The translations under genes were made by a program, and so were the position numbers. The notes under the pieces were generated by a model. The model was not told where the DNA came from. It saw only the letters and a program-made list of their open reading frames with translations, and made no database searches. 64,000 bases of DNA, taken from the sequence record PV654397.1; one strand, given 5' to 3'. Of the stretch, positions 1 through 64,000 are shown one piece after another. The first letter of the stretch is position 1. Every line of letters starts with the position of its first letter.

Positions 1-31
1 GCCCCAAATGAGGCATCAAATGAAATTCAAA

Positions 32-727
32 TTAGACCCACTCTTCCACGCCACCGCGACGTTTGACGAGATACTTACCTTCTTCGTTGCGTGGACCAAG
101 GATGATACCATCAATGAAACCATGTTCACCGTATTCGAGTGCTTCTTCAGCGTTCAACCACAGGTCACGATCCGCATCTTTCAGTAGTTGTTCGTGTGAT
201 ACACCAACTGCTTCAGCAATTTCTTTAGTCAGTAGTGTGTTCAATGCATCAGAGTGTTTCAAGGAAATCTTCTGATCAGTAATCAGACCCTGAGTACCGG
301 AACTTACTTGGTGACACATGAAGTAAGAACGCTTCCCGCCTAGACGGAAACCTTTAGTACCAACTACTGATTGTGTATAGCAACCCATTGATGCTGCATA
401 ACCCATTACTACTGTACGGATAGGAGATACACAAGACTTAGCAATGTCAGCGATACCTAAACCTGCGTGTACTGAACCACCAGGAGAACTAATGTAGAAG
501 GTAATTGGTTCAGAACCCTGAGAATCCAACCACACCAATTGTTGCTTGATGATATGTGCCATTTGGTCATTGAAGTCAGTATCAAGGAAAATGATACGGT
601 CTTGCATCATACGAGATGCTAGATCATAAGTACGTTCTGCACCATTAACTTTTTCAACTACATAAGGAATAGAAATGTCGCGAACTTCACCACCAGCATA
701 ACCACCAAAATTGAATTGTTCAACCAT
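32..727 (-). CDS. clpP: ATP-dependent Clp protease proteolytic subunit
   Basis: IPYVVE..ERTYDL.SR..DRIIFL N-terminus, SPGGSV, catalytic Ser (AASMG), His (MCHQ), Asp (DRDLW), EALEYG..ID. Confidence 0.95.
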   Translation of the reverse strand: MVEQFNFGGYAGGEVRDISIPYVVEKVNGAERTYDLASRMMQDRIIFLDTDFNDQMAHIIKQQLVWLDSQGSEPITFYISSPGGSVHAGLGIADIAKSCVSPIRTVVMGYAASMGCYTQSVVGTKGFRLGGKRSYFMCHQVSSGTQGLITDQKISLKHSDALNTLLTKEIAEAVGVSHEQLLKDADRDLWLNAEEALEYGEHGFIDGIILGPRNEEGKYLVKRRGGVEEWV

Positions 728-761
728 TGTTATTTTCCTCTATTGTTTCATTGATGTGAGT

Positions 762-789
762 ATTATATCACAGTGTTCGTATTTGTCTA
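762..789 (-). promoter_or_regulatory. sigma70-type promoter of clpP
   Basis: TAGACA-N16-TATAAT with extended -10 TGA. Confidence 0.65.
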
Positions 790-1170
790 CAAGTTTCTTA
801 AAAAATCGAGTAAACCGCAAATTGTATGTTTATTAAACATATCGTGGTCAATCTTTAACAACTTAACCATAGCATTATCATACACCGTAGAGTCGGTAAT
901 GTCAAACAAAGAATTTGTGTAATAACGTTCATTTTCTACATAAATGTATAATTCATTTGATTTGTCAAGATCTTCATAGAAGTTAGCATCAAAGTACTCT
1001 GCATTTCCATCAATCCAAACCTCAACTGAATCATCATCTAAGCAGTAGTTTCTTGCTTCTTTTGAATATATTTCCAGCTTTCTGGCTGCACTGGAGTAAT
1101 GTTTATAACCATTAATTACGTACTTTATTTCATCATTGTACTCAATTACATACACAACGATATTTTCCAT
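787..1170 (-). CDS. hypothetical protein
   Basis: 127-aa ORF, start overlaps upstream stop. Confidence 0.7.
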   Translation of the reverse strand: MENIVVYVIEYNDEIKYVINGYKHYSSAARKLEIYSKEARNYCLDDDSVEVWIDGNAEYFDANFYEDLDKSNELYIYVENERYYTNSLFDITDSTVYDNAMVKLLKIDHDMFNKHTICGLLDFLRNL

Positions 1171-1565
1171 CAGTACACCCCTATTGACGCAAGAGTATGA
1201 AGAAATTCATATCGTATACCAACTGGGATGTCATCAAAATCAATCTCAATCATTCTTAGTGAATTTGAAAATTGTTCGTATTTAAAGAACGTATTAATTG
1301 ATAAAGTACTGAATGGTAACACATCACCACGACTATCATCATGTACAAGAACATACACCTTTCCCACAAATGAATCCAAATCGTCTGCTTGTCTTACATC
1401 ACTGGTGAAGTTATACCTATCTTTCATCACAGTGCCAGTACCATCAGGATTGTAGTATTGGGTTTTATCACAAGAGTATAGTATACGCATACCCCATCGT
1501 CGATACAAATGACAGCTACCCAATATAACAAGCATTTTGTCTTTTATATGCAATGTATATATCAT
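1170..1565 (-). CDS. hypothetical protein
   Basis: 131-aa ORF in operon context. Confidence 0.7.
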   Translation of the reverse strand: MIYTLHIKDKMLVILGSCHLYRRWGMRILYSCDKTQYYNPDGTGTVMKDRYNFTSDVRQADDLDSFVGKVYVLVHDDSRGDVLPFSTLSINTFFKYEQFSNSLRMIEIDFDDIPVGIRYEFLHTLASIGVY

Positions 1566-1574
1566 AGTAATTCC

Positions 1575-2366
1575 TTAGATTTCAAATACAAATTTAGGAT
1601 CGTAATCGAAGTTCTCACATGCACCACTGTAAGATTCATAACCTCTTGGATTACAAATGATACGAGTTTTCCCAATGTTGTAGTCAAAGCTACTATGAAC
1701 GTGACCATGAATCCAAACATCAGCACCCAAATCTTCGATGTACTGGTCCATATCAGAACAATAACATCCATTCAGTGAGTCATTCTTGTATCTCGGAGAT
1801 ACACTCTGATAACTTGGTGCATGATGTGTTACCACCACAACCTTGAAATCATTATCATTCATTAGACGAACTGTGTTAACTGAATTTTTGATAAATTGTT
1901 TATCCTGATGATGCATGAACTCAACATCATCAGGTTTGAGCTTACGTTTCCACGGTTCTGATGTTGTTCCATGACGAATGTGTTTATAATCATTCATCTT
2001 TTGTTGAGCATCAAACTTAACCAGTGCGTTGCCTTTATCAAAGTCAGTCCACAGTGTACTACCAACCAGCAGTACACCATCCAGCCATACAAATTTGTTT
2101 TGCAAAAAGATGAAATTTGGAATCTCATCTTGCATATCGGACAGTACTTTATTAGTCTTGTGAATGTTTGAACCGTAGTACTCATGATTACCAGGAACCA
2201 GTACTACATTCTTGAACTGCTTGCACAGGGATTCGATACCAGTACGATAACGACTGCGTTTAGCTTCATCAAAGTCCCCTGCAATAATCAGTACTGTATC
2301 ACTGTAATCACCACTATGGAGGTAATCAGTGCCACCGTGTACGTCTGACGTTACAACAAATTTCAT
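1575..2366 (-). CDS. calcineurin-like metallophosphoesterase
   Basis: SDVH, AGD, GNHE, THH, HGHVH motifs; GAGG SD. Confidence 0.9.
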   Translation of the reverse strand: MKFVVTSDVHGGTDYLHSGDYSDTVLIIAGDFDEAKRSRYRTGIESLCKQFKNVVLVPGNHEYYGSNIHKTNKVLSDMQDEIPNFIFLQNKFVWLDGVLLVGSTLWTDFDKGNALVKFDAQQKMNDYKHIRHGTTSEPWKRKLKPDDVEFMHHQDKQFIKNSVNTVRLMNDNDFKVVVVTHHAPSYQSVSPRYKNDSLNGCYCSDMDQYIEDLGADVWIHGHVHSSFDYNIGKTRIICNPRGYESYSGACENFDYDPKFVFEI

Positions 2367-2385
2367 AATTACCTCCTATAAATGA

Positions 2386-3804
2386 TTAACCAAGTGATTC
2401 AAGAATACTGTTAGAGAACACCTCAACAGCACTATCACGAATTTCTAAGATACGAGTATAGTCGTCACAGGTGTTTTTGTCAAATCTAAATTCAATAAAC
2501 ACTGGTAAAAATAGTGATGGCTCGCCAGTTCTCTTATCGAACACAATATCATTGCACTCTACTGTCACTACTTGACCAATGAGTTCTTGCATTCTTTCCC
2601 AAATGGTTTTAAACGTCCATTCTGCGTCTTTCTCTTTAATTCCAGTACCTACATTAACTTTCAATGTACCACAAGCACTTTCCAGTTGTAAAGAACCAAG
2701 GCTACCTTTACGCTTACCTTCACCTTCATTGAAACCAACAATACGCAAGTCCAATTGCATTTTAAGTTTCATTTTCAATTGCTTAGGAGAAGTGTGAGAT
2801 TTCCATATACCATCTTCACATTTCAGTACTGAACCCTCTTCACCTTCGTTCATTAGTTCACTATTGTACTCAAATGCTTCTTTGATGTTTAGAACTTTAC
2901 GGAATCCAACCATACGAACAAAATCACTACCGAGTTCGTTAATTGCATCTACTAAGATCTCGCGGCGTTCTTTACGTTTTACATTCCATACACCTTCACA
3001 AAATGCATCATATGGAACAACATCCCATAGAACGAATACAGTACGCATTGCTTCATTTTGACTGATGCTATCTTTACCAGCTTTCTGAATGATACCGTTA
3101 CCAGTAGTGCGTGGGAGAATGGTTTCTCCATCATTGTCCAGTACTACACCTTCACCCATAAAGACTACACCACTACTAAAACGTTCATCTTTACTTTGGA
3201 TGATGTGAGCAAGACCTGCCATTTCACCATCACGACAACCCAGGAAGTCGTATAGTTTGCCATTACGGGATGTAGAAGTTAATGAACCATTAATGACAAC
3301 GTGGTTCAAGTACTGACCATCCATCTTCACTTCTGATATAGCATAACCATAATCTTTGAAGTTAATGTTCTTTGCAGTCTTTTTGTCAATCAAAGAACAA
3401 CGCATGTATGGTTCGTCTTTGATGAAACCTTTCCCGAACACATCATTACAGTTCTTTTCTTGGATACCACAATCAAGGTTCTTCGTGAGCATTTTACGAA
3501 GAACTTCCTGGTCATCTTCTGATACAGAACCCAGTACTGAAGAAATGAAGTCACGCCCAGCATTTCCGGTCACACCACGTTTGTAAATGCATTCTAGCTT
3601 ATCAATTGCTTCGTCTAATGTCATATGTTGGTATAGATCATCAGCTTGTGGTAGCTTTTTATATCCACTTACAATTGAAGGGTCTAGTGTATATTTCAGT
3701 ACTTTTTGTAATGTTTGATTATCTTTGTTTTGTTCAAGGATAGCTTTTTTACCCAGAGTACTGCTAGTATTTTTAATGCTTTCAAGAATTGCTAAAATGC
3801 TCAT
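2386..3804 (-). CDS. lig: ATP-dependent DNA ligase (T4 gp30-like)
   Basis: EVKMDG adenylation motif, MGEG, WDVV, EGSVLK, C-terminal OB fold with VGTG and LFLPVF..R.DK. Confidence 0.95.
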   Translation of the reverse strand: MSILAILESIKNTSSTLGKKAILEQNKDNQTLQKVLKYTLDPSIVSGYKKLPQADDLYQHMTLDEAIDKLECIYKRGVTGNAGRDFISSVLGSVSEDDQEVLRKMLTKNLDCGIQEKNCNDVFGKGFIKDEPYMRCSLIDKKTAKNINFKDYGYAISEVKMDGQYLNHVVINGSLTSTSRNGKLYDFLGCRDGEMAGLAHIIQSKDERFSSGVVFMGEGVVLDNDGETILPRTTGNGIIQKAGKDSISQNEAMRTVFVLWDVVPYDAFCEGVWNVKRKERREILVDAINELGSDFVRMVGFRKVLNIKEAFEYNSELMNEGEEGSVLKCEDGIWKSHTSPKQLKMKLKMQLDLRIVGFNEGEGKRKGSLGSLQLESACGTLKVNVGTGIKEKDAEWTFKTIWERMQELIGQVVTVECNDIVFDKRTGEPSLFLPVFIEFRFDKNTCDDYTRILEIRDSAVEVFSNSILESLG

Positions 3805-3815
3805 TGTATATTCCC

Positions 3816-5018
3816 TTATAGATAATACTTTCCAATGTAAAGTTTATTACTTAGTGATAGCTGGACGTGACAAGGTTTTTCTTGGTAGTAACGAGTTGAT
3901 GCTGTTTTATTTTCAGTTGGTGGGAAGAAAGGAGAACGGTATCCATTCCATGTACCAAATGATACATGTTCGTTTAAATCCACATCCATTGTCATAATTC
4001 CATTAGCATCAATTTCAACTGGATATGCACTGTATCGTTCAAATGTATCAGTGTATTGAAGAATATAATCACCATTACGACCATAATAACTTCTGGTTGT
4101 ATTGTTCTTTACACCAAAGAAAACACGATATGCTTGGTCACCAACTTTAGTCATGAACGGTACGTTCTCGTTGAATCGTCCATTACTCATTATATCATCA
4201 GGATTGATTTCTTCGTACTTTACTTTCAAATCTTGTGCTTTAAACGACTTATCACTTATCAGTACTGGAATATTGCTTTCACATAATGGGTTACTGCGAT
4301 TTCGTTGGATATTTTGCCAAAATGCATTAGCTTTAACAATTTCATCTTGAACTGTAGTTTTTACATTCAGTGCAGCACTTGGTTCTAACGCATAAGTTTC
4401 AAGACGAGCATTAAGAGCATATGTCCCACGAGTAGTATTATATACTAAGTGATACTTGGAACTCTTATCAGAAAATGAAAACTCTTTAGTTTTCTTGATA
4501 CAAATAGCATTTACTTTACCACAATAATAGTAATCTTCCTTATTGTGTCTAAAACCATCACCCACTTTCAATTTAGAAACAACTTCTTTTTGATGTTCTT
4601 TCTTATTCTCCTTCTCAACCAATTTAGCAAAGGTTTTAGTTTTACCGTTAATTAGTTCTAAACTATTATTAAAGAACATAGGTTCAACAAATACACCCTT
4701 AACAATATCATTGTTGATGATAAGGTCGTTCATGTTTTTAGCACTCACCAAGAACTCGAAACCTTCAGGGTGACGTATGGTGAAGTATGTTTCGCGAGCA
4801 TGAACAGTGAGCTTATGTACCACAGAAAACCCAATTGTAGGCACATTATCAATCCATAGTGAAGGTAGATTGTTTTTCTTAGCCCAGTACTCGGCCTTTT
4901 CTTTTTTAGTCTCAAACGCTTTTGTGTGTGATTTTGTGGCATCTATAATGTAACCAGTAACTTGGTTATGATTTACATATGAACGAGCCACAAATAACTT
5001 CTCTGGAAAATCCATCAA
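3816..5018 (-). CDS. hypothetical protein
   Basis: 400-aa ORF, no recognised catalytic motif. Confidence 0.8.
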   Translation of the reverse strand: MMDFPEKLFVARSYVNHNQVTGYIIDATKSHTKAFETKKEKAEYWAKKNNLPSLWIDNVPTIGFSVVHKLTVHARETYFTIRHPEGFEFLVSAKNMNDLIINNDIVKGVFVEPMFFNNSLELINGKTKTFAKLVEKENKKEHQKEVVSKLKVGDGFRHNKEDYYYCGKVNAICIKKTKEFSFSDKSSKYHLVYNTTRGTYALNARLETYALEPSAALNVKTTVQDEIVKANAFWQNIQRNRSNPLCESNIPVLISDKSFKAQDLKVKYEEINPDDIMSNGRFNENVPFMTKVGDQAYRVFFGVKNNTTRSYYGRNGDYILQYTDTFERYSAYPVEIDANGIMTMDVDLNEHVSFGTWNGYRSPFFPPTENKTASTRYYQEKPCHVQLSLSNKLYIGKYYL

Positions 5019-5434
5019 ACAGTCCTCATTGTGCTAATTGCTTTTAATGTGTTAAACAATGCACCATATTTTACTTGCATTAGTTGATCCCCAGCAGGAA
5101 GATTCATACGCATAACAGACATGTCTTCAACCATTTCAGATGTACATAGTACTGCTACACATGTAGTTGCATCATTTAATCCGGCTTCATTGAATTTAGC
5201 GAATGGCACTTTTCCCTGCTTACAAAGGTCATCATAATAAGAATTTAACTTATCATGACCACCAGCATTTAGTACTACAATAGTTTCGTGGTCATAATAC
5301 CATTCATCAATAATAGTACTGAAAGCAGTACCTTCATATTCTTTAATTAGTTTTATGCCAGCATGAAATGCTTGAATGCCAGCTTGGACACCTTGACAGT
5401 ACATGTTTGTTAAGCAATATAATTTCATTTCCAT
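5015..5434 (-). CDS. putative peptidyl-tRNA hydrolase type 2 (Pth2)-like protein
   Basis: QAGIQAFHA, W...HETIVVLN.G, F.EAGLNDATTCVAV pattern resembles Pth2 fold. Confidence 0.55.
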   Translation of the reverse strand: MEMKLYCLTNMYCQGVQAGIQAFHAGIKLIKEYEGTAFSTIIDEWYYDHETIVVLNAGGHDKLNSYYDDLCKQGKVPFAKFNEAGLNDATTCVAVLCTSEMVEDMSVMRMNLPAGDQLMQVKYGALFNTLKAISTMRTV

Positions 5435-5652
5435 ACCTCTTGTTTTTCTACAAACCCTTTACCATCACAATGTGGACAAGCATAATAACTGCGATAGTCT
5501 TCAGATGGAACTTGTTGTGTACCATTACATGTAGGGCACACTTTACGTGCTCCAGAAATAATACGTTCATGGTGTTCAGCTTGTTTTGCTGAATCAAAAA
5601 TACGACCATCTTCAGTTTGGTATTTTTCTACCATAACTTGAATTACTTTCAT
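5425..5652 (-). CDS. small DnaJ-type zinc-finger protein
   Basis: CPTCNG...CPHCDGKG. Confidence 0.75.
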   Translation of the reverse strand: MKVIQVMVEKYQTEDGRIFDSAKQAEHHERIISGARKVCPTCNGTQQVPSEDYRSYYACPHCDGKGFVEKQEVWK

Positions 5653-5662
5653 TTCTATTTCC

Positions 5663-5932
5663 TTATAAAAATGTTAAATCTTCAGTACTTAATTGTAATA
5701 ATTTACCATCATATTCAATTTCAACATATACATTTTGGTCATAAACAGCAACTACACGACTAATAACTCCACTCTTCACCACATTCTTTTTGTAGTTGAA
5801 TTCAACTGAGCAACCAATAAGTTTCTTTGATAGAATCTCACGTATTTGATTAGCATGGTCTTTTAGGATAGAATTAATAGATTTTTTCACAACATATCTA
5901 TCATTTAAGTATTTTTTAACTACATCATGCAT
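5663..5932 (-). CDS. family C paralog
   Basis: helix then KKLIGCSVEF; ATG 5932 after AGGT SD. Confidence 0.7.
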   Translation of the reverse strand: MHDVVKKYLNDRYVVKKSINSILKDHANQIREILSKKLIGCSVEFNYKKNVVKSGVISRVVAVYDQNVYVEIEYDGKLLQLSTEDLTFL

Positions 5933-5936
5933 ATTA

Positions 5937-6680
5937 TTACCTTTTGAAGCGGTTAAATGAGTACTCATCTTTTTCTTTACGTAAGTATCTCATCCCACCA
6001 CTTTGGGGAGTTGCAAGAGTCAAATCACCAGTTAAGAACTGACTATCAATCCAGATACGATTACCATAAATGAGTGGGTCGGATACTGCGGTATGACCAC
6101 TAAAGACGCAATGGATACCATCAAGTCTAGGGACGTAATATGTGTTATTTTTCTTGCAGTAGTCGAATGTATCACGGTCCCACAAGCACTTCTCAATTAT
6201 ATCAGCACTAAGTGATTTTGTCCCACTAACGAAACGTTCCCATGTGGTATATTCCAAAGGAACACCAGCATGAACCAGTCCAATCTTCAATCCTCGGTGA
6301 TTGATTTGGATAATCATAGGGAGATCCTTTAAGTACTGACGGAAGAACTGTATACCTGTCTCACCAACTTCATCAATGAACTTATCTCCACCATTTTGTA
6401 CCCAACAGTGATGCCAGTCACGGTGAGTTTCAGAATCAACGCACATGATCTCGTGGTTACCAGCAATCATAAAACGGTTTTCACCGAAAAGGAATTCAAA
6501 CAGTAGTTTGGAATTCTGGTCACCACGGTCAATAACATCACCTACACAAAAAACATAGTCATTATTGGTGATACCAAATTCTTTCTTGGTAGCATCCCAC
6601 AGTTTTCCATTGCCGTGTAAATCACCAACGATATATAAATCTTTATCATCCGGTACTGTAACTTCCAAAAAATGTTTCAT
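5937..6680 (-). CDS. Ser/Thr protein phosphatase (NinI/PphA-like)
   Basis: GDLHG, GDVIDRG, GNHE, HAG, FSGHT; ATG 6680 overlaps upstream TAA. Confidence 0.92.
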   Translation of the reverse strand: MKHFLEVTVPDDKDLYIVGDLHGNGKLWDATKKEFGITNNDYVFCVGDVIDRGDQNSKLLFEFLFGENRFMIAGNHEIMCVDSETHRDWHHCWVQNGGDKFIDEVGETGIQFFRQYLKDLPMIIQINHRGLKIGLVHAGVPLEYTTWERFVSGTKSLSADIIEKCLWDRDTFDYCKKNNTYYVPRLDGIHCVFSGHTAVSDPLIYGNRIWIDSQFLTGDLTLATPQSGGMRYLRKEKDEYSFNRFKR

Positions 6681-7149: not shown

Positions 7150-7151
7150 TA

Positions 7152-7484: not shown

Positions 7485-7486
7485 TG

Positions 7487-8387: not shown

Positions 8388-8444
8388 AACAACTACTCCA
8401 TGTCAGTGTTGTAATGAAATTATATCACCGAATCAAGATATGTC

Positions 8445-11008: not shown

Positions 11009-11011
11009 CCT

Positions 11012-52901: not shown

Positions 52902-52930
52902 AATTTTTACCCCATGATTAACGTACAGGT

Positions 52931-52959: not shown

Positions 52960-52960
52960 G

Positions 52961-53511: not shown

Positions 53512-53514
53512 TGT

Positions 53515-54100: not shown

Positions 54101-54101
54101 A

Positions 54102-57218: not shown

Positions 57219-57433
57219 TTACTTTGTATCTCTCTCTTGAGGGCATCAATTAACAACAGTACAGCATTCTCTTGATAGTTTGTTCCTAAGACTGAAAGCA
57301 TCTTAATCTCATTTACTACAATCAACTTCTTTGAGCGTTCAATAATGTTACTATTATAAACGGCGTTACGTGCTGGATAAGTTTTTGCAAGACGTTCATA
57401 ATATTCATCTTTACTTAAATTAATCATTTGCAT
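57215..57433 (-). CDS. family B paralog
   Basis: LGTNYQE. Confidence 0.8.
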   Translation of the reverse strand: MQMINLSKDEYYERLAKTYPARNAVYNSNIIERSKKLIVVNEIKMLSVLGTNYQENAVLLLIDALKREIQSK

Positions 57434-57642
57434 TTACTTTTGACCTCCTTGACTAATGCATCAACCCACATGTCTATATACATTTGTTGATAGTTTGTCC
57501 CTATGAGTGCCCCTGCATAGAGTTCAGCTATCATTGCATGTTTTAGGTTGGCAGGGATGCTCTTATCAGATTGAATCTTTACTCTTCTGTTGGCACATGT
57601 TTTCAGGAGTCTGATGTATTCAAAGCCTTGTAATTTTCTCAT
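57424..57642 (-). CDS. family B paralog
   Basis: IGTNYQQ. Confidence 0.8.
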   Translation of the reverse strand: MRKLQGFEYIRLLKTCANRRVKIQSDKSIPANLKHAMIAELYAGALIGTNYQQMYIDMWVDALVKEVKSKCK

Positions 57643-57854
57643 TCTTTTGATATCACCTTGTTACGTAAGGCACTTAACAATACGTCAGTGTAGATGTTTT
57701 GATAGTTTGTTCCTACGAAAGCACCCAACTTCATTTCAGCTATTATAACACATTTATCCTCTTGTGCAATAGACTTGTCTAAAGAAATACTAACAACTTT
57801 CCTTCTTATAGCTTGTAACCTCCAATGATACTGATACTCATTTAGGGTTATCAT
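57639..57854 (-). CDS. family B paralog
   Basis: VGTNYQN. Confidence 0.8.
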   Translation of the reverse strand: MITLNEYQYHWRLQAIRRKVVSISLDKSIAQEDKCVIIAEMKLGAFVGTNYQNIYTDVLLSALRNKVISKE

Positions 57855-58089
57855 TCTCTCGCCTCCATATCTCGGTTCTAATGTGTTGACATTGTGCTTC
57901 GATGAACATATCTATTGATTTGGCAATTGCGTTTTTATCTGTGCCAGTCATCAGTACAAGCATCTCGGCCTCACAGTGAAGTAAACGCATGATATCATAG
58001 GGTAATATTCCAGATACCGTGTCATAGTGTTTCTGTGCCAGTGTCTGTAATAGTTTACAATACATTTTGTGATTTAGTCTGTGTCGCAT
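57838..58089 (-). CDS. family B paralog (variant)
   Basis: MTGTDKNA. Confidence 0.7.
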   Translation of the reverse strand: MRHRLNHKMYCKLLQTLAQKHYDTVSGILPYDIMRLLHCEAEMLVLMTGTDKNAIAKSIDMFIEAQCQHIRTEIWRRENDNPK

Positions 58090-58325
58090 TTTTTATTCCA
58101 TTCTTTTTTGGCCTTGATGGTTTTATATTGGATTTGGTTTCTTAATGCTGATAAGTATCGTTGAATGAACAGATCTTGATAGTTTGTTCCAATGAATTTC
58201 ATAAGATAAAGTTCACCGTTGATAACATCCACTTCAGGTGCACCATATAAGGCATTGTTTTTTCTAAGGGCATGGATTAAAGAGAATAGGGCAGTTTGAT
58301 ACTCAACTCCTGATAAAGTCTTCAT
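58074..58325 (-). CDS. family B paralog
   Basis: IGTNYQD. Confidence 0.8.
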   Translation of the reverse strand: MKTLSGVEYQTALFSLIHALRKNNALYGAPEVDVINGELYLMKFIGTNYQDLFIQRYLSALRNQIQYKTIKAKKEWNKKCDTD

Positions 58326-58560
58326 GTTTTGTGAGCCAATAATCATCTAGTTTATCCTGTATAACATTCATTAATTGTTCGACATATTCTGTGCAAAACT
58401 TATCTTGATATTGAGTCCCCATAAAGTACAGCAACCATAGCTCATTAACTTTAGCTCGCATTTGGTTCCATGTAAGGCTGGGGTCATCGTAGACTATCCT
58501 TGCTATAGGGGTTAGTTTACGGACTATAGTTTCATATTCATCTAGTGTTAAGTGTTTCAT
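58303..58560 (-). CDS. family B paralog
   Basis: MGTQYQD. Confidence 0.8.
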   Translation of the reverse strand: MKHLTLDEYETIVRKLTPIARIVYDDPSLTWNQMRAKVNELWLLYFMGTQYQDKFCTEYVEQLMNVIQDKLDDYWLTKHEDFIRS

Positions 58561-58781
58561 TTACCTAAATCCCTGACATGACATTTTAAGGCCGTGATGT
58601 GGTTGTCAACCATAACCTCCTGATAGTTTGTTCCTACAAATGGTATTAATGTTGAGTCTGTTAGTATAACATACTTTTCATTGGATGTTAGTGATTCATC
58701 ATCGTAAACTTGAAGTCTAAAGTTCTTCCCTTGTTCTAATCGTTTAAGATATTCTTGGGTGTTTATGTCTTTCATTTGCAT
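58557..58781 (-). CDS. family B paralog
   Basis: VGTNYQE. Confidence 0.8.
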   Translation of the reverse strand: MQMKDINTQEYLKRLEQGKNFRLQVYDDESLTSNEKYVILTDSTLIPFVGTNYQEVMVDNHITALKCHVRDLGK

Positions 58782-58990
58782 TTGTCCCTTATTAGATCAG
58801 TGAGGGCAACTATGTGTGCAACAACATACTCTTCCTGAAAGTTCGTCCCCAGTACAGCCATCATGCGTATATCGGTGGTGTTTATCCTGTGTTCCCTTAC
58901 ACATAAACCTTCTGTGTGAGGAAGTGTAAAATATTTGTTTATTGCAGCAATGATAATTTTATTCTTCTCGTAATTACTTAAATGTTTCAT
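58772..58990 (-). CDS. family B paralog
   Basis: LGTNFQE. Confidence 0.8.
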   Translation of the reverse strand: MKHLSNYEKNKIIIAAINKYFTLPHTEGLCVREHRINTTDIRMMAVLGTNFQEEYVVAHIVALTDLIRDKCK

Positions 58991-59199
58991 AGTTTGCTCT
59001 TAATGTATTTCTGGAGTGCAATTATATACTCATTCAAGAAGTGCTCCTGATAATCTGTGCCGAGGAATGCACCCAATAGTATATCATTTTCCAATACTAA
59101 TGCTAAGTTCAAATCATCAGTCTCTTCATATACTATGAGAATTTCAAGTTGTCTTGCAGCGACGCGTTCGGTATATAGATTTGAGTTAATGCTATTCAT
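58987..59199 (-). CDS. family B paralog
   Basis: LGTDYQE. Confidence 0.8.
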   Translation of the reverse strand: MNSINSNLYTERVAARQLEILIVYEETDDLNLALVLENDILLGAFLGTDYQEHFLNEYIIALQKYIKSKL

Positions 59200-59408
59200 A
59201 GTTTACTCTTAATGTAATTCTGGAGTGCAATTAAGTATTCCCCTACATAATACACCTGAAAGTCTGTATCCAAAAATGCACCCATAAGTAAATCTTTTTC
59301 TAATACCCTTGATAAGTTAAGGTCTGCATTTGAATTGTATATAATTAAGATTTTATTCTGGACAGAAACAAAACGTATCTTATATTCTTCTGGTGTTAAA
59401 AAAATCAT
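59196..59408 (-). CDS. family B paralog
   Basis: LDTDFQV. Confidence 0.8.
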   Translation of the reverse strand: MIFLTPEEYKIRFVSVQNKILIIYNSNADLNLSRVLEKDLLMGAFLDTDFQVYYVGEYLIALQNYIKSKL

Positions 59409-59614
59409 AGTTTACTCTTAATATCTTCTATTAAAAAATGAATCCAATCGTCAACATACTCTTCCTGATGGTTTGTGTTCAGTACAGCCAACATGCGGAT
59501 CTCTGCTCTTGCAACTTGGATTTCAGTTTTAGAAAGGTCTTTGCTGATATCAAACATTAAGTCCATGTATTTCAAGATAAGACCGAATGATTGGGTTCGT
59601 GTTATAGTTTTCAT
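59405..59614 (-). CDS. family B paralog
   Basis: LNTNHQE. Confidence 0.8.
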   Translation of the reverse strand: MKTITRTQSFGLILKYMDLMFDISKDLSKTEIQVARAEIRMLAVLNTNHQEEYVDDWIHFLIEDIKSKL

Positions 59615-59811
59615 TGTTTCCTCGTGGACAATATTTCATTTTTCAATGCATCCATATATTGAATCACCCATCTTCCCTGATAGCTTGTACCCAATGTAAT
59701 CAAAAGGTATAACTCAATTCGTTCTAAGTTTGTGTCTGTGTTATAAATCTTTACCATGTTTTTACGTAACAGTTCTTGATAATCTTCTTTATTTAAAATA
59801 CGCATTTTCAT
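59611..59811 (-). CDS. family B paralog
   Basis: LGTSYQG. Confidence 0.8.
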   Translation of the reverse strand: MKMRILNKEDYQELLRKNMVKIYNTDTNLERIELYLLITLGTSYQGRWVIQYMDALKNEILSTRKQ

Positions 59812-60005
59812 AGTCTACCTTTTATGTCCCTTCGTAATTCTTGTAAGTATAGTTCGATATACTTTTCTTGATAGTTAGTTCCTATGAAAAGTTTCATAAC
59901 CAATTCACGCTTATATGCAATACCACGGATATGTGACATATGTAGGATATATGCCATGTTGGATATGAGTGTGTGGTTGTGCTCTTCTTGAGTTAAAATA
60001 CGCAT
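59808..60005 (-). CDS. family B paralog (first gene of the array)
   Basis: IGTNYQE; GGAG SD. Confidence 0.8.
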   Translation of the reverse strand: MRILTQEEHNHTLISNMAYILHMSHIRGIAYKRELVMKLFIGTNYQEKYIELYLQELRRDIKGRL

Positions 60006-60035
60006 AGGGACTCCATTAAAAATAATATCAATCCA

Positions 60036-60063
60036 ATAATATACGATTCATATAAAAAGTCAA
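60036..60063 (-). promoter_or_regulatory. sigma70 promoter of family B array
   Basis: TTGACT-N16-TATTAT. Confidence 0.7.
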
Positions 60064-60254
60064 TAACATTTTATAAGTAATACCCCTTTATCGAAGTCGC
60101 TAAGGTTACCCGCCCTTTAGCCCCCTACGCATTTTGCCATAGTCCAATCCCTTTTTATTCATAAAAGTCAAGGGATTACCTATGCATTTTTTTAACGCTG
60201 AAGTTTAAAAATGCCTTGACTTTTTTATGATTCAGTACTAAATCCCTTTACGCA

Positions 60255-60464
60255 TTAATCCTTCGTTACGCTTACGATTATCTGTGTATCCCCATAGTCC
60301 TGCCATACTTCCACGCCAGCCGTCGCCCTGGTTAGTCGTGCTGTCATCTGCTTAATGGTCTTAGGCTTTAGTGGAACCTGTTGCAGTACTGTACGCATAG
60401 TATCATCGACGTTATCGTGTACGCCTGCAATAGTGCCTAGGACGCTGTATACTGTATAGAACAT
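60255..60464 (-). CDS. early hypothetical protein
   Basis: 69 aa, GGAGG SD. Confidence 0.75.
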   Translation of the reverse strand: MFYTVYSVLGTIAGVHDNVDDTMRTVLQQVPLKPKTIKQMTARLTRATAGVEVWQDYGDTQIIVSVTKD

Positions 60465-60532
60465 ATGTATGCCCTCCTGATATAGTTAAGGCCGCTACAA
60501 GGCGGCCTATGATGTTTGGTGATGTGTAACGC

Positions 60533-60934
60533 TTACAGTCCTAAGATAGTGCGTGCTTCGTTACGTTCCGTGCACAGCTGCATGATGTGAGCAAGTAAGT
60601 CCTTGCTAATGTATCCGGTGTTCATAGCTTCACGAATAGATACATCATAAGCACCGAACCCCGTGCGAACGATACGCACATCATTCAGGTTAGTATTATA
60701 GATACCGCCGAGATCAACGGCTTCGAATACTACATCAACAGAATATTCATTGTTGCCATCGTGGAAGTTTTCCAGTGCAATAGTATTGGATACCGCCCAA
60801 CGTTTGCAGTTTCCAATGATGCGGCACTGTTCCGGTTGGATAGTGCCATTACTTACAGCGTACTCCAGTGCATCTTTACCAAAAGTCCGAGCCAGTACTA
60901 AAACGTCAGCGAAGGAAGTGATTGAGAAGGTCAT
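60533..60934 (-). CDS. early hypothetical protein
   Basis: ATG 60934 after AAGGAG. Confidence 0.8.
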   Translation of the reverse strand: MTFSITSFADVLVLARTFGKDALEYAVSNGTIQPEQCRIIGNCKRWAVSNTIALENFHDGNNEYSVDVVFEAVDLGGIYNTNLNDVRIVRTGFGAYDVSIREAMNTGYISKDLLAHIMQLCTERNEARTILGL

Positions 60935-60988
60935 GATAAAACTCCTTAATTTAGGAGGGAGAACCATTTCCCCCTCTCTATGTAAAAC

Positions 60989-61016
60989 ATTATACATGAA
61001 TCTAAGTACTATGCAA
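60989..61016 (-). promoter_or_regulatory. early promoter followed by leader hairpin
   Basis: TTGCAT-N16-TATAAT; AGTACT in spacer and upstream of -35. Confidence 0.8.
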
Positions 61017-61019
61017 GTA

Positions 61020-61355
61020 CTATTTCATTTTAATACCTGGATTCAGGTAACGGTGAGAGCCGTATTCTGGAGAGGTTTCGGTCCAGTACAGTAAATCGAT
61101 AGTCCCTTTAGCGTTAATCTTATCTACCAGCTTATTCATCTTAGCGTATACTACATCAGCATCGATGCGTTTAAAGCCAGTAGCTTTAGTGAAGTAGTAA
61201 TGATTTACTTCGCTATCGTTAAGGATATACCGAGAACCGTCAGCCGTTTGTGCGACAATGAATGAGAATGATACTTTACGATCAAGGCCGTCGCAGTATA
61301 CAGATGAATCATTGGTACGGATGAAAGCTTTAACGATATCGATTGAAGTACTCAT
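61020..61355 (-). CDS. early hypothetical protein
   Basis: 111 aa, AGGAG SD. Confidence 0.8.
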   Translation of the reverse strand: MSTSIDIVKAFIRTNDSSVYCDGLDRKVSFSFIVAQTADGSRYILNDSEVNHYYFTKATGFKRIDADVVYAKMNKLVDKINAKGTIDLLYWTETSPEYGSHRYLNPGIKMK

Positions 61356-61408
61356 GGTGAATCTCCTAACTTTGTGGGCCGTCGCACCGTTGCCGCCCTA
61401 CGAGATAC

Positions 61409-61437
61409 ATTATTGCAGTACTGATATACTTTGTCAA
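61409..61437 (-). promoter_or_regulatory. early promoter
   Basis: TTGACA-N17-AATAAT; AGTACT in spacer. Confidence 0.65.
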
Positions 61438-61546
61438 TACTTTTTTATTAATAGTTTTAGTTCCACCAGCAGATAGTTACTCACCGTTATTAACTATATA
61501 TTTTGGATACACCTATGCACCCTGTGGGCTAGTTTTTGTCTATGCG

Positions 61547-61588
61547 TATATAATAGCAAAGGGACTGACCGGAGTCAATCCCTTTTTT
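61547..61588 (-). repeat. terminator-promoter cassette, copy 1 (42-bp exact repeat)
   Basis: hairpin with UCCG loop carrying TTGACT-N17-TATTAT; identical at 63807-63848. Confidence 0.85.
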
Positions 61589-61601
61589 TATTCTTTTTTT
61601 G

Positions 61602-61802
61602 TTAGATGATTCTCCAATCATCAACGATCATGGTAAGATACCGAACCAGTGATTCGAGTGATTCGTGTTCTCGATAGTCTGCCGCTCCACCAGCGGTACA
61701 AGTACAGCCGATTAAGCCGTTTTGTAGTTCCTGGATCTTTACGTCGATCTGGTTGGCTTTAGCTTCTTTCAGTACTTCAACCAGGGCGATAGCGATAGAC
61801 AT
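61602..61802 (-). CDS. early hypothetical protein
   Basis: 66 aa, CxC, GGAG SD. Confidence 0.75.
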   Translation of the reverse strand: MSIAIALVEVLKEAKANQIDVKIQELQNGLIGCTCTAGGAADYREHESLESLVRYLTMIVDDWRII

Positions 61803-61857
61803 AATGTTTTACTCCAAACTATTGGCGGGAGAACTATTCCCCCGCTCTATGTAAAAC

Positions 61858-61885
61858 ATTATACATTACTGGTTAGTACTGTCAA
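61858..61885 (-). promoter_or_regulatory. early promoter followed by leader hairpin
   Basis: TTGACA-N16-TATAAT; AGTACT overlaps -35. Confidence 0.85.
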
Positions 61886-61892
61886 ATAGTTT

Positions 61893-62150
61893 TTATGAAA
61901 TATCTTCGATGTAGTCGGCCCATTTCATTTTTTCAGTACTGTCAATGGCTACCGGATTATTTGGATCAAACCATTCACCATCACCGCAATACATACCCAC
62001 GGCTACGGTTTTATAGCCATCCTGGGCCGTACACCACGACATTGCACGATAGATATGGCCTTTAACTGGTTGCAGTACTGGTAACGTTTTATGGTCTTCT
62101 ACGTAGGCCATAGCTTGAGGATTTACCCGATATTGTGTGAACTGATCCAT
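61893..62150 (-). CDS. early hypothetical protein
   Basis: 85 aa. Confidence 0.75.
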   Translation of the reverse strand: MDQFTQYRVNPQAMAYVEDHKTLPVLQPVKGHIYRAMSWCTAQDGYKTVAVGMYCGDGEWFDPNNPVAIDSTEKMKWADYIEDIS

Positions 62151-62178
62151 TATGTTTCCCCTTGTAGTTAGTAAAGTT

Positions 62179-62207
62179 ATTACATCAGTACTATCAAGCT
62201 ATGTCAA
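62179..62207 (-). promoter_or_regulatory. early promoter
   Basis: TTGACA-N17-TGTAAT; AGTACT in spacer and upstream. Confidence 0.7.
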
Positions 62208-62226
62208 TAGTACTGAAATAAAACTT

Positions 62227-62451
62227 TTAGATTAGATTATTGAGGCCGTCAATGGTAGACTCACTTTCTTCTTTCTCCCATTGTCGGTAGTACTTCCATG
62301 CTTCATGATAGGTGGCGATTAGTTCATCTTTTTGATCCTGGTTACATGCCAGTACTGAATCACGGTGAGCGGTGTTATAGATAGAATCGAATGATTTCTT
62401 CTCTTCTGCCAGGTTAGCTACTTCCCGCATCAGTTCATCAAAGTTAGCCAT
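62227..62451 (-). CDS. early hypothetical protein
   Basis: 74 aa, AGGAG SD. Confidence 0.75.
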   Translation of the reverse strand: MANFDELMREVANLAEEKKSFDSIYNTAHRDSVLACNQDQKDELIATYHEAWKYYRQWEKEESESTIDGLNNLI

Positions 62452-62498
62452 TTTATTACTCCTTTTAGTGGGGGAGGATATCTCCCCCTATGCAAAAC

Positions 62499-62526
62499 AT
62501 TATACTTTGTTTTAGTTATTATGCAA
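62499..62526 (-). promoter_or_regulatory. early promoter followed by leader hairpin
   Basis: AGTAC-TTGCAT-N16-TATAAT. Confidence 0.8.
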
Positions 62527-62782
62527 GTACTTTTTTCATATAAACATTAAATTCTACACCGCCGTAACCTTCCACGATGATATGTTTTGCGTTATCACGT
62601 TTGCACATAGTGAAACCGTTGTTGATATGTTCTGCATTTTCCAGGGCGACATCACCGATAGCGGCACATACGGCACTAATAACAGTATTCCGCAAAGTAC
62701 TGGTATCATTGGCGGTCATAGTAGTTTGCAGTACTACGTTGTCGTATACGTGTGCATTGATAGTGATTTCGATAGTGTTCAT
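62519..62782 (-). CDS. early hypothetical protein
   Basis: ATG 62782 after AGGAG. Confidence 0.75.
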   Translation of the reverse strand: MNTIEITINAHVYDNVVLQTTMTANDTSTLRNTVISAVCAAIGDVALENAEHINNGFTMCKRDNAKHIIVEGYGGVEFNVYMKKVLA

Positions 62783-62834
62783 GGTGTATCTCCTGGACTT
62801 GAGGGGAAACCATTTCCCCCTCTCGATATAAAAC

Positions 62835-62862
62835 ATTATACGTTAATCTAACTACAATGCAA
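62835..62862 (-). promoter_or_regulatory. early promoter followed by leader hairpin
   Basis: AGTAC-TTGCAT-N16-TATAAT. Confidence 0.8.
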
Positions 62863-62869
62863 GTACTTT

Positions 62870-63061
62870 TTAAATTTTATTTCCGATATAGTCCGGTCTA
62901 TTCTTTTCGGTCATACGCTTTGCTAATGTCTGCATATGGCTTATAGCGTTCAAGGTGTCTTCCTCCAGGGATGAATCAAGATAATCAGGATCATTCTTCA
63001 CCTTGCAATGATTATGATATCGTAGTACTGCCAGTACTTTTTTAACTTCTTCTACTGTCAT
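62870..63061 (-). CDS. early hypothetical protein
   Basis: 63 aa. Confidence 0.7.
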   Translation of the reverse strand: MTVEEVKKVLAVLRYHNHCKVKNDPDYLDSSLEEDTLNAISHMQTLAKRMTEKNRPDYIGNKI

Positions 63062-63330
63062 AATAAGTACCCCACTTCGTTAGCTTTCAGGTTAGTATCA
63101 ATCATCAGTGGATTTTTGTAGTTCACAAAACGATTAGTTTTTTCGATAGCAAATCCCATATAATCCAGCTTACTAACAGTACATTCATTCTTAAAAACTT
63201 CTTTCGCTGCATCGATTGCTGATTGCATGGATAACCGACCATCTAAATTAATGTTTCCAAATGATCCACCAGCAGAAGTAGGATTACCGTTCATATCTTT
63301 AATGATCATAGTAGCGGAGTAGCTAGACAT
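63058..63330 (-). CDS. early hypothetical protein
   Basis: 90 aa, AGGA SD. Confidence 0.75.
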   Translation of the reverse strand: MSSYSATMIIKDMNGNPTSAGGSFGNINLDGRLSMQSAIDAAKEVFKNECTVSKLDYMGFAIEKTNRFVNYKNPLMIDTNLKANEVGYLL

Positions 63331-63383
63331 AATTTTGTTTCCTTTTAGTATCGGGGAGAACTATTCTCCCCTTGATGTAAACT

Positions 63384-63411
63384 ATTATACAGTACTGGTA
63401 TACTTTGTCAA
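63384..63411 (-). promoter_or_regulatory. early promoter followed by leader hairpin
   Basis: TTGACA-N16-TATAAT; AGTACT in spacer. Confidence 0.85.
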
Positions 63412-63414
63412 TAC

Positions 63415-63636
63415 TTAATTACGGTTAAAATGATATGTGCCTTTATCATCCTGTACGCCCCATACTGATTTACCATCAACACCAGTGAAGCCGGATTGTA
63501 ATTCAATATGGAAACCATTATTATCAACTACAAAAACTTTTTTATTTTCATCCCGATAACATTGATATTCTGAATCAACATTAAAGGCCGCATCATTCAG
63601 TAGATTGGAAGCGTAAATGCAAGTCATTGTAGTCAT
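63415..63636 (-). CDS. early hypothetical protein
   Basis: 73 aa, AAGGA SD. Confidence 0.75.
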   Translation of the reverse strand: MTTMTCIYASNLLNDAAFNVDSEYQCYRDENKKVFVVDNNGFHIELQSGFTGVDGKSVWGVQDDKGTYHFNRN

Positions 63637-63687
63637 GATTTTATTCCTTATTGCCAGGGAGAACCGTTCCCCCTCTCGATATAAAAC

Positions 63688-63715
63688 ATTATACTTGATT
63701 CTAAGTACAATGCAA
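63688..63715 (-). promoter_or_regulatory. early promoter followed by leader hairpin
   Basis: AGTAC-TTGCAT-N16-TATAAT. Confidence 0.8.
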
Positions 63716-63806
63716 GTACTTTTTAAAAAATAGTTTTCAGTACTGAATACTTATATAATAGATACACTTCCGCACCCTATGGGTCAGTGAGTTATCTCTC
63801 AATGGA

Positions 63807-63848
63807 TATATAATAGCAAAGGGACTGACCGGAGTCAATCCCTTTTTT
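63807..63848 (-). repeat. terminator-promoter cassette, copy 2
   Basis: identical to 61547-61588. Confidence 0.85.
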
Positions 63849-63856
63849 AATCTTTT

Positions 63857-64000
63857 TTATCGTGTTACCTTACTTGCTGCCACATCACGCTTTTTATAGT
63901 ACTGATTCCAGATATTGCTGGTTAAACCGTAATCAAGTACTTTAATAAGTCCATTACGATCCTGGCCGATATTCTGTTTTCTGATATCTCTTATCGTTAG
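63857..64000 (-). CDS. C-terminal fragment of a Ser/Thr protein kinase-like gene (runs off window)
   Basis: RDIRKQNIG catalytic loop and KVLDYG (DFG equivalent); not in ORF track. Confidence 0.7.
   Translation of the reverse strand, partial: LTIRDIRKQNIGQDRNGLIKVLDYGLTSNIWNQYYKKRDVAASKVTR

What the first reader, a model, noticed from the sequence alone, without database searches (positions are those of the whole stretch)
1..64000. AGTACT behaves as a highly iterated palindrome across the whole window
Seen: 7 AGTACT sites in the first 3 kb (993, 1305, 2143, 2177, 2200, 2290, 2825), 9 in 40001-40785 and 21 in 61347-63941. At about 31% GC chance gives roughly 1 per 3 kb. Sites occur in all three reading frames (Ser-Thr AGT ACT, Val-Leu GTA CTN, Gln/Lys/Glu-Tyr NAG TAC) and in non-coding DNA, so this is not a single codon-pair artefact. 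Established: phages usually deplete 6-bp palindromes to avoid restriction, and the closest analogy is cyanobacterial HIP1, which is tied to methyltransferases. Inference: the site is a phage self-mark or binding signal (modification, protection from a phage nuclease, DNA condensation, recombination core). I know of no description of this in phages but cannot search.
Basis: partly seen in the sequence, partly recalled or inferred. Interest (0 to 1): 0.92.

Follow-up and report, generated by a model that had tools for sequence, protein, structure and literature searches.

The report
Iterated AGTACT palindrome in jumbo phages
A whole clade of giant enterobacterial phages, which otherwise purge palindromes from their DNA, keeps the palindrome AGTACT at about ten times the chance frequency (34 times the host's density); this appears undescribed, and its function is not yet known.

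Summary
The window is 100% identical to Escherichia phage WPEC5, a Rak2/PBECO4-like jumbo myovirus. AGTACT is its commonest hexamer: 205 copies against 21 expected, and 173 coding copies against 49±7 after synonymous-codon shuffling. Genome-wide it is the sole outlier among 4096 hexamers (z=49).

The enrichment (8-11x) is shared by every relative tested across at least four named genera that infect Enterobacterales. Sister phages PA5oct and XacN1 avoid the site. About half of all other 6-bp palindromes are depleted in the clade, and at least ten, plus GCGC, are absent from all five genomes analysed.

Flanks are dyad-symmetric (C-AGTACT-G). Sites are conserved above background, and they are densest in sigma70-like early promoters of the terminal repeat.

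"Across the whole window" is wrong. Window 44012-52457 has no AGT at all on the + strand, so about 23 genes have ACT-free coding strands. The nearest permitted variant, AGTACA, is enriched there instead.

Best reading: a selected, DNA-level recognition site for a clade-specific dimeric reader or marker of phage DNA. I found no published description.

The parts
1..43938 (.). AGTACT-rich bulk of the window: 163 sites, about 3.7/kb. Genes are almost all on the - strand.
   Evidence: annotation
19679..20203 (-). Clade-specific orphan Dam-family N6-adenine DNA methyltransferase (PF05869). It is the only remaining encoded candidate writer of the site; its specificity is unknown.
44012..52457 (-). 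Island with no AGT on the + strand, i.e. no ACT on the coding strand. It covers about 23 small, fast-evolving genes (44066-52323). AGTACT count is 0. The surrogate AGTACA occurs 42-44 times on the coding strand.
   Evidence: the same pattern in phAPEC6
44156..44205 (.). Masked run of 50 N. The flanks are continuous (exactly 50 nt apart in the identical record and in relatives). The letters were not looked up.
52458..54508 (.). Short site-rich stretch between the two holes: 14 AGTACT sites in 2 kb.
54509..60233 (-). Second hole. Most of it is a tandem array of about 20 paralogous genes of 70-80 aa each (54320-59808), so it counts as few independent observations. It carries AGTACA x9 on the + strand.
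60103..64000 (.). Inner part of the right 21,662-bp direct terminal repeat: 26 sites in 3.9 kb, the densest class.
60935..61019 (-). Example of an early intergenic region. Two AGTACT sites (61005, 61016) flank the -35 element of a sigma70-like promoter, which is followed by a G-rich hairpin.
63331..63414 (-). Example of an early promoter, TTGACA-N9-AGTACT-G-TATAAT, with the site (63391) in the spacer next to the -10 element.

Best explanation
AGTACT, optimally C-AGTACT-G, is a selection-maintained signal read on duplex DNA. It is most likely the dyad-symmetric recognition site of a dimeric DNA reader specified by the Rak2/PBECO4-like clade of enterobacterial jumbo phages.

The site labels phage DNA about every 340 bp, 34 times the density in the E. 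coli chromosome. That would let a phage function be addressed to phage DNA rather than host DNA.

The same site sits at fixed places in the sigma70-like early promoters of the terminal repeat, where it would act as an operator.

Shown here: the enrichment, its DNA-level nature, its symmetry, its conservation, its clade distribution and its promoter placement. Inferred only: that a protein reads it, which protein, and what the label is used for.
For: - Enrichment survives codon-preserving shuffles. It is unique among 4096 hexamers and among 64 palindromes.
- Sites occur in all three phases and in non-coding DNA.
- Flanks are symmetric in five genomes: C at -1 is 2.5-3.1x enriched in four and 1.8x in CBB, and G at -1 is 0.4-0.5x in all five.
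- Sites are conserved above background. Against PBECO4 it is 76% versus 48% of all hexamers. Across genera it is 37% versus 15% (EJP2) and 25% versus 11% (CBB), with most of the remaining sites lineage-specific.
- Every clade member tested is enriched: AGTACT 850-1313 copies per genome, CAGTACTG 68-425 copies against 1-6 for the reversed control. PA5oct (15 against 97 expected), XacN1 (0 against 92) and T4 are not.
- Host density is 0.086/kb.
- Terminal-repeat intergenic DNA has 11.9 sites/kb. Sites sit at three discrete offsets (-5, +5, +15) from the -35 element.
- In the ACT-free island the nearest permitted variant, AGTACA, is enriched (42 against 12). The pressure for the site therefore acts there too.
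- The Dam-family methyltransferase is conserved in all five genera and absent from both outgroups.
Against: - No reader was identified. Pfam scans of about 30 clade-specific or island proteins gave nothing useful.
- No TetR-type, ScaI-type or Vsr-type protein is encoded.
- No methylome or binding data exist. The one RNA run of raw reads tried held no phage reads.
- 107 genes share the clade-specific distribution, so co-occurrence with the methyltransferase is weak evidence.
- The model does not by itself explain the strand-specific ban on ACT in the island.
- Most sites lie in coding DNA, where an operator role is not obvious.
Confidence: 0.45

Rival explanations
1. Epigenetic mark. The clade's orphan Dam-family methyltransferase methylates AGTACT or GTAC, and the high site density is selected because the methyl marks themselves are used, for example to tell packaged from newly replicated DNA at early promoters or to discriminate strands.
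For: A PF05869 methyltransferase is conserved in all five genera and absent from the outgroups. GATC is depleted (O/E 0.42-0.71), so this enzyme is probably not simply protecting GATC. Sites overlap the -35 and -10 elements, where methylation can change promoter use.
Against: Its specificity is unknown. The other conserved methyltransferase is DNMT3-like, and the clade shows a CpG-depletion signature, so that enzyme is probably not the AGTACT enzyme. AGTATT and AATACT are neither enriched nor clearly depleted.
Confidence: 0.2
2. Molecular drive without function. A very-short-patch-type repair or biased gene conversion keeps converting near-cognate sequences to AGTACT, as has been proposed for cyanobacterial HIP1.
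For: Sites turn over rapidly (63-75% are not shared between genera) while density is maintained. A methyltransferase-associated drive is the standing hypothesis for HIP1 (my own knowledge, not checked here).
Against: No Vsr homologue is present. None of the 18 one-off neighbours is clearly depleted (z from -3.4 to +8). A drive does not predict discrete promoter positions, the higher density in the terminal repeat, or enrichment of one specific surrogate in the island.
Confidence: 0.1
3. Strand-reading enzyme on single-stranded DNA. ACT would be the trinucleotide recognised by the phage's T4-type primase or by a nickase. AGTACT would then be a back-to-back pair: one cryptic T plus a 5-nt primer template on each strand.
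For: Primases are the one known enzyme class that reads strand-specific trinucleotides on DNA (my own knowledge). The 8.4-kb island lacks ACT on one strand only. A T4-like replisome with a TOPRIM primase is encoded.
Against: Trinucleotides are frequent by chance, so no hexamer enrichment is needed. ACT outside the palindrome is not enriched, about 1.1x by my arithmetic. The model explains neither the flank preference nor the promoter placement, and it offers no benefit for banning priming on one strand.
Confidence: 0.08
4. RNA-level signal. An ACU- or GUACU-specific endoribonuclease, from phage or host, cuts site-rich early messages, in the way T4 RegB cuts at GGAG. The ACU-less island messages would be exempt.
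For: In WPEC5, all 16 genes that have 0 ACT where at least 4 are expected lie in the island. A gene pair in EJP2 and Erwinia phage Hallingskeid, 36% identical, is also ACT-free. The island's borders fit gene borders. Site-free messages that escape sequence-specific toxins are an established principle.
Against: The flanks are symmetric, which an RNA signal does not need. Many sites lie upstream of transcription starts. ACU is not avoided in the rest of the genome. The known E. coli ACU-cutter ChpB also cuts ACA (PMC12151602), and ACA is enriched in the island.
Confidence: 0.1
5. Host SlmA decoy. The sites bind the E. coli nucleoid-occlusion factor SlmA, whose consensus GTGAGTACTCAC has AGTACT at its core, and so block cell division.
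For: The 6-bp core is identical, and every clade member examined infects Enterobacterales.
Against: SlmA needs G, T and a purine at the three flanking positions (PMC3020112). The phage genomes hold only 0-2 full sites of this type. SBS-type flanks are about 2-fold depleted, and G at -1 is the rarest base.
Confidence: 0.03
6. Artefact of codon pairs, dipeptides, repeats or paralogous genes.
For: Several tandem paralogue families exist in the genome.
Against: See the codon-shuffle result, the three phases, the intergenic sites, the varied flanks and the enrichment in every 5-kb bin of late structural genes.
Confidence: 0.01

Closest known systems
HIP1 (GCGATCGC), the highly iterated palindrome of cyanobacteria
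   Same: It is a short palindrome that is by far the most over-represented word in the genome. It is dispersed through coding DNA in all frames and through non-coding DNA, and it is shared by a whole clade. Orphan methyltransferases are present in the same genomes, and no agreed function exists.
   Different: This case is in a virus, not a cell. The core is 6 bp (8 bp with its preferred flanks). The rest of the genome is under extreme palindrome avoidance. Sites are concentrated in early promoters. No cognate methyltransferase has been shown, and no sign of a repair-type drive was found.
SlmA-binding sites (GTGAGTACTCAC) of E. coli
   Same: The AGTACT core is identical. Both are palindromes read by a dimer, and both are spread over a chromosome as an address label.
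   Different: The flanking bases that SlmA requires are depleted in the phage sites, and no TetR-type protein is encoded. There are about 1,000 sites per 0.36 Mb here, against tens of sites per 4.6 Mb in E. coli.
Uptake sequences (USS/DUS), Chi and KOPS: over-represented 'self' words of bacterial genomes
   Same: All are short words kept at roughly one per kb or more, which let a machine tell own DNA from foreign DNA.
   Different: Those words are asymmetric and strand-oriented and belong to cells. This word is a palindrome in a phage. Chi itself is also enriched here (37 copies in WPEC5, against roughly 2-3 expected by my own arithmetic).
Restriction-site avoidance in phages
   Same: Both show selection acting on short palindromes in phage DNA. 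This clade shows it strongly for other sites.
   Different: The sign is opposite. AGTACT is the only 6-bp palindrome above 2x in all five genomes, and the sister phages avoid it.
Toxin-site-free messages (for example ACA-less mRNAs and MazF); T4 RegB and GGAG
   Same: The ACT-free island resembles a gene set made immune to a trinucleotide-specific nuclease.
   Different: No ACU-only nuclease is known to me. This comparison concerns the island, not the palindrome itself.

Membership tests
Highly iterated palindrome (HIP1-like element) | A palindromic word that is the extreme outlier of the genome's oligonucleotide spectrum after correcting for composition and codon use | tested here: met
   z=49 against codon shuffles, unique among 4096 hexamers. 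It is the only palindrome above 2x in all five genomes.
Highly iterated palindrome (HIP1-like element) | Dispersed in coding DNA (all frames) and in non-coding DNA, not carried by a longer repeat | tested here: met
   Phases 437/167/306 and 201 intergenic sites. Flanks vary. Every 5-kb bin outside the two holes is enriched.
Highly iterated palindrome (HIP1-like element) | Shared by a clade and absent from its relatives | tested here: met
   All 12 enterobacterial members tested are enriched; PA5oct, XacN1 and T4 are not.
Highly iterated palindrome (HIP1-like element) | A cognate methyltransferase acts on the palindrome | not testable with these tools
   Two conserved orphan methyltransferases are present, but their specificities are unknown. 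The C5 enzyme looks CpG-type.
SlmA-binding site array | A 12-bp site GTRAGTACTYAC, with G, T and a purine at the three flanking positions | tested here: not met
   There are 0-2 full sites per genome and SBS-type flanks are about 2-fold depleted. The requirement is taken from PMC3020112.
ScaI-type restriction-modification system | An AGTACT-specific endonuclease (Pfam RE_ScaI) is encoded | tested here: not met
   No PF09569 match in five genomes at E<=1.
Methyltransferase plus very-short-patch repair drive | A Vsr-type mismatch endonuclease, plus depletion of the one-transition neighbours | tested here: not met
   No PF03852 match. Neighbour z-scores run from -3.4 to +8. Other endonuclease families were not excluded.
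Restriction-site avoidance | The site is under-represented relative to expectation | tested here: not met
   O/E is 8-11 in the clade. It is met in PA5oct (0.15) and XacN1 (0).

The most novel reading that the evidence does not exclude
The palindrome, the ACT-free island and the total absence of GCGC may be parts of one sequence-based self/non-self scheme. This clade of T4-like jumbo phages would use it in place of base hypermodification.

Under this reading, one clade-specific factor reads ACT in two contexts. On duplex DNA it reads a back-to-back pair, AGT·ACT, which labels phage DNA and gates the early promoters. On single-stranded RNA or DNA it reads single ACT or ACU as a nuclease target. 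About 23 early genes are exempt from that nuclease because they carry no ACT at all.
Probability: 0.2. Interest if true: 0.95.

Novelty: new variant of a known kind. Interest (0 to 1): 0.85.

Why it matters
Phages are the textbook case of palindrome avoidance. Here a clade of therapeutically studied jumbo coliphages and Klebsiella phages has deleted GCGC and at least ten 6-bp palindromes completely, yet carries about 1,000 copies of one palindrome.

Some machinery therefore reads or writes AGTACT on phage DNA, and that machinery is not annotated. Finding it would explain how these hmC-less T4 relatives tell their DNA from the host's, or how they time early transcription.

It would also give HIP1-type elements, unexplained for 30 years, a small and tractable model: E. 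coli, lytic phages and synonymous recoding.

The site has practical uses. It is a one-word diagnostic for the clade in metagenomes. ScaI or RsaI digestion of virion DNA is an immediate test for modification.

The ACT-free island is a second unexplained signal. An 8.4-kb run without a trinucleotide whose mean spacing is 49 bp has no precedent that I know of.

Tried and rejected
- **Codon-pair or dipeptide artefact.** Rejected by shuffles and by the intergenic sites.
- **Longer repeat or paralogy.** Rejected for the bulk and for the first hole. Accepted as the reason why the second hole counts as only a few observations.
- **Recent foreign insertion as the cause of the first hole.** Rejected. 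The island is conserved in phAPEC6 at 76-80% identity with the same pattern. Its genes are restricted to Asteriusvirus.
- **m5C deamination decay as the cause of the island.** AGTATT is not enriched while AGTACA is.
- **SlmA.** Rejected on flanks.
- **ScaI-type nuclease, Vsr, TetR-type protein.** None encoded.
- **RNA hairpin instead of DNA dyad.** The -1/+1 pairs show only a modest excess of complementary pairs (10-22%), which is not decisive.
Weakened by its DNMT3 similarity and by the clade's CpG-depletion signature.
Three batches of clade-specific or island proteins gave nothing usable.
- **Expression data.** The only raw-read RNA run offered (X21) held no phage reads, and contigs of X15 only confirm a related phage in that sample.
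- **Helical periodicity of site spacing.** Only a weak excess at 20-24 bp.
- **Literature.** Seven full-text searches and two genome papers of the clade (Sharanji PMC11895373; CBB PMC5259590) found no mention of the palindrome. This is not proof that none exists.
Full report
**Identity and the gap**

The window is 100% identical to Escherichia phage WPEC5 (PV654397.1, 381,326 bp), record positions 299563-363562. WPEC5 is a Rak2/PBECO4/121Q-like jumbo myovirus with T4-like replication and morphogenesis genes. Genes lie almost entirely on the - strand.

The record carries identical 21,662-bp direct terminal repeats, and window 60103-64000 lies in the right one.

The N run 44156-44205 was tested first. 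Its flanks map to record positions 343717 and 343768, exactly 50 nt apart. The same spacing is seen in several relatives listed in both searches. The two sides are therefore continuous.

I did not read the masked letters. WPEC5 was fetched without positions 343701-343779, and close relatives were fetched only to one side of the homologous place. The distant genera fetched whole have no detectable homologue of the neighbouring island genes tested. Family scans of the whole WPEC5 record printed no letters.

**The observation**

AGTACT occurs 205 times in 64 kb. Expectations are 21.4 (zero order), 17.5 (first-order Markov) and 40 (second-order Markov).

- It is the commonest hexamer in the window, and has 205 copies against a median of 21 for the 180 words of the same composition.
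- Shuffling synonymous codons within each gene leaves 48.8±7.1 coding sites against 173 observed in the window, and 252±14 against 910 in the genome.
- Under the same shuffle, AGTACT has z=49 among all 4096 hexamers. The next words are CAGTAC (36) and GTACTG (31), and the next several words (z 11-14) nearly all overlap TTCAGTACTGAA.
- Sites fall in all three codon phases (437/167/306) and in non-coding DNA.

**Anatomy of the site**

The flanks are dyad-symmetric. At -1, C is 2.5-3.1x enriched in four of the five genomes and 1.8x in CBB, while G is 0.4-0.5x in all five. T is mildly preferred at -3 and -4, and the 3' side mirrors this.

CBB accepts A as readily as C at -1. The core is therefore fixed while the flank preference drifts between genera.

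The two flanks are close to independent, with a 10-22% excess of complementary pairs. This fits a dimer reading two half-sites on duplex DNA better than it fits an RNA stem.

**Distribution along the genome**

WPEC5 has 1,122 sites against 128 expected. Densities by region are as follows.

| Region | Sites per kb |
|---|---|
| Bulk coding DNA, including late structural genes | 2.4 |
| Bulk intergenic DNA | 3.1 |
| Terminal-repeat coding DNA | 4.2 |
| Terminal-repeat intergenic DNA | 11.9 |

The terminal-repeat intergenic regions hold sigma70-like promoters, each followed by a G-rich hairpin. AGTACT sits at three discrete offsets from the -35 hexamer. It abuts the hexamer on either side, sharing one letter, or it lies in the spacer next to the -10 element.

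**Evolution**

Sites are conserved above background.

| Comparison | AGTACT sites kept | All hexamers kept |
|---|---|---|
| WPEC5 vs PBECO4 (85.6% identity) | 76% | 48% |
| WPEC5 vs EJP2, orthologous codons | 37% | 15% |
| WPEC5 vs CBB, orthologous codons | 25% | 11% |

In the EJP2 comparison AGTACT ranks 7th of 1,180 hexamers for conservation. Even so, most sites are lineage-specific, so density is maintained through turnover.

Every clade member tested is enriched. These members are PBECO4, 121Q, EJP2, fENko-Kae01, Munch, KP13-7, Erwinia phage Hallingskeid, Yersinia phage fHe-Yen9-04, Serratia phage BF and Pectobacterium phage CBB. CAGTACTG has 68-425 copies per genome, against 1-6 for the reversed control word.

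The related Pseudomonas phage PA5oct has 15 sites against 97 expected, Xanthomonas phage XacN1 has 0 against 92, and T4 has 28. E. coli K-12 has 400 sites in 4.64 Mb. One phage genome thus carries almost three times as many sites as the host chromosome, at 34 times the density.

**Context: extreme palindrome avoidance**

In the five genomes analysed whole, 31-36 of the 64 six-bp palindromes have O/E below 0.5. At least ten are absent from all five, including GAGCTC, GCATGC and TCCGGA. CTGCAG, AGGCCT and CTCGAG are absent from four of the five and have one or two copies in the fifth.

AGTACT is the only six-bp palindrome above 2x in all five. GCGC has 0 copies in all five (219-552 expected) and normal counts in the outgroups.

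This suggests that the DNA is exposed to sequence-specific nucleases and is not protected by a global hypermodification. That makes the retained palindrome the more remarkable.

**The holes**

The second hole (54509-60233) is largely a 20-member tandem paralogue array, so it counts as few independent observations.

The first hole is something else. From 44012 to 52457 the + strand contains no AGT at all. The coding strand of about 23 different genes therefore contains no ACT, where 158 are expected. The mean spacing of AGT in the genome is 49 bp. The run is 174 times that, and the next-longest trinucleotide-free run is 18 times its own mean.

phAPEC6, an independent record that is 76-80% identical here, shows the same pattern over 7.3 kb. 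The island's genes occur only in Asteriusvirus. The one island gene compared is 56% identical at the protein level between sublineages, against 97% for DNA ligase.

In WPEC5, all 16 genes with no ACT where at least 4 are expected lie in this island. In EJP2 and Hallingskeid, an orthologous gene pair only 36% identical is also ACT-free.

AGTACT cannot exist on such a strand. The closest permitted word, AGTACA, is enriched instead: 42 copies against 12 from the bulk rate, in all three phases. AGTATT is not enriched, so the pattern is not deamination decay. The pressure for the palindrome therefore acts inside the island too, and a stronger, strand-specific ban on ACT overrides it.

I cannot explain that ban. 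Two readings fit its strand and trinucleotide character: an ACU-specific ribonuclease from which these messages are exempt, or a strand-reading DNA enzyme such as a primase or nickase. The known E. coli ACU-cutter ChpB also cuts ACA (PMC12151602), and ACA is enriched in the island.

**Candidates for reading or writing the site**

- No RE_ScaI, Vsr or TetR_N homologue is encoded.
- Two orphan methyltransferases are conserved in all five genera and absent from both outgroups.
- The 286-aa C5 enzyme is most similar to the DNMT3 catalytic domain. The clade shows CpG O/E of 0.73-0.89 with CA/TG at 1.19-1.23, a signature absent from the outgroups. It is probably a CpG-type enzyme.
- The Dam-family enzyme (window 19679-20203) remains a candidate. 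GATC is depleted, so it may not be a GATC enzyme.
- 107 genes share the same clade-specific distribution, and those I scanned had no informative domains.
- SlmA, whose site has AGTACT at its core, is excluded by the flanks.

**Verdict**

The enrichment is real, DNA-level, dyad-symmetric, under selection, clade-wide and, as far as the searchable literature shows, undescribed.

I commit to a recognition-site model. A clade-specific dimeric reader, either a binding protein or the Dam-family methyltransferase, uses AGTACT as an address label for phage DNA and as an operator in early promoters. My confidence is about 0.45. The rivals are listed with their tests.

The element works like HIP1 and meets the HIP1 features that could be tested here. 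The methyltransferase link could not be tested.

Noticed in passing
window 44012-52457 (record 343574-352019); phAPEC6 L020:1-7314: An 8.4-kb run has no AGT on the + strand, so the coding strand of about 23 genes has no ACT. The run is 174 times the mean spacing of AGT. It is conserved in an independent relative. No explanation is established.
   Followed up: yes
EJP2 L021:15914-16654 (+); Hallingskeid L057:419-1162 (-): An orthologous gene pair, 36% identical at the protein level and absent from WPEC5, is completely ACT-free in both genera where about 17 ACT are expected in each. No Pfam domain was found.
   Followed up: partly
whole window and all five clade genomes: GCGC has 0 copies in WPEC5, EJP2, Hallingskeid, KP13-7 and CBB (219-552 expected) but normal counts in PA5oct and XacN1. 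It is the only absent 4-mer. This could reflect a host or a phage-encoded GCGC nuclease.
   Followed up: partly
all five clade genomes: At least ten 6-bp palindromes are absent from, or have at most two copies in, all five genomes (for example CTGCAG, GAGCTC, GCATGC, TCCGGA, CTCGAG). GGTACC and CAGCTG are also essentially absent in WPEC5. About half of all 6-bp palindromes have O/E below 0.5.
   Followed up: partly
record 100609-101469 (L005:609-1469, - strand): A compact 286-aa C5 DNA methyltransferase is most similar to the DNMT3A/B catalytic domain and is conserved at 63-77% identity across genera. The clade shows CpG depletion with a TpG/CpA excess that the outgroups lack.
   Followed up: partly
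WPEC5 genome; also the other four clade genomes: The E. coli Chi sequence GCTGGTGG is over-represented: 12 + 25 copies in WPEC5 against roughly 2-3 expected (my own arithmetic). Chi-like words CTGGTG and CACCAG are 4-5x enriched in WPEC5, and CTGGTG is enriched similarly in EJP2, KP13-7 and CBB.
   Followed up: partly
window 60465-63736, intergenic regions of the terminal repeat: Nearly every small early gene has its own sigma70-like promoter, followed about 10 nt downstream by a conserved G-rich stem-loop (GAGAGGGGGAA...TTCTCCCTC) in the 5' leader.
   Followed up: no
window 54320-59808: A tandem array of about 20 paralogous genes of 70-80 aa lies directly inside the right terminal repeat boundary. 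It also holds a 4.5-kb CCG-free run.
   Followed up: partly
whole genome, coding regions: TAAATA and TATTTA are strongly avoided inside genes (z -15 and -12). This fits the T4-type late promoter ATAAATA reported for CBB, and a gp55-like sigma factor is encoded.
   Followed up: no
window 5015-5428 (-): A weak match, just below the family cut-off, to peptidyl-tRNA hydrolase PTH2. It lies next to an RNA-repair set of polynucleotide kinase, RNA ligase and DNA ligase.
   Followed up: no
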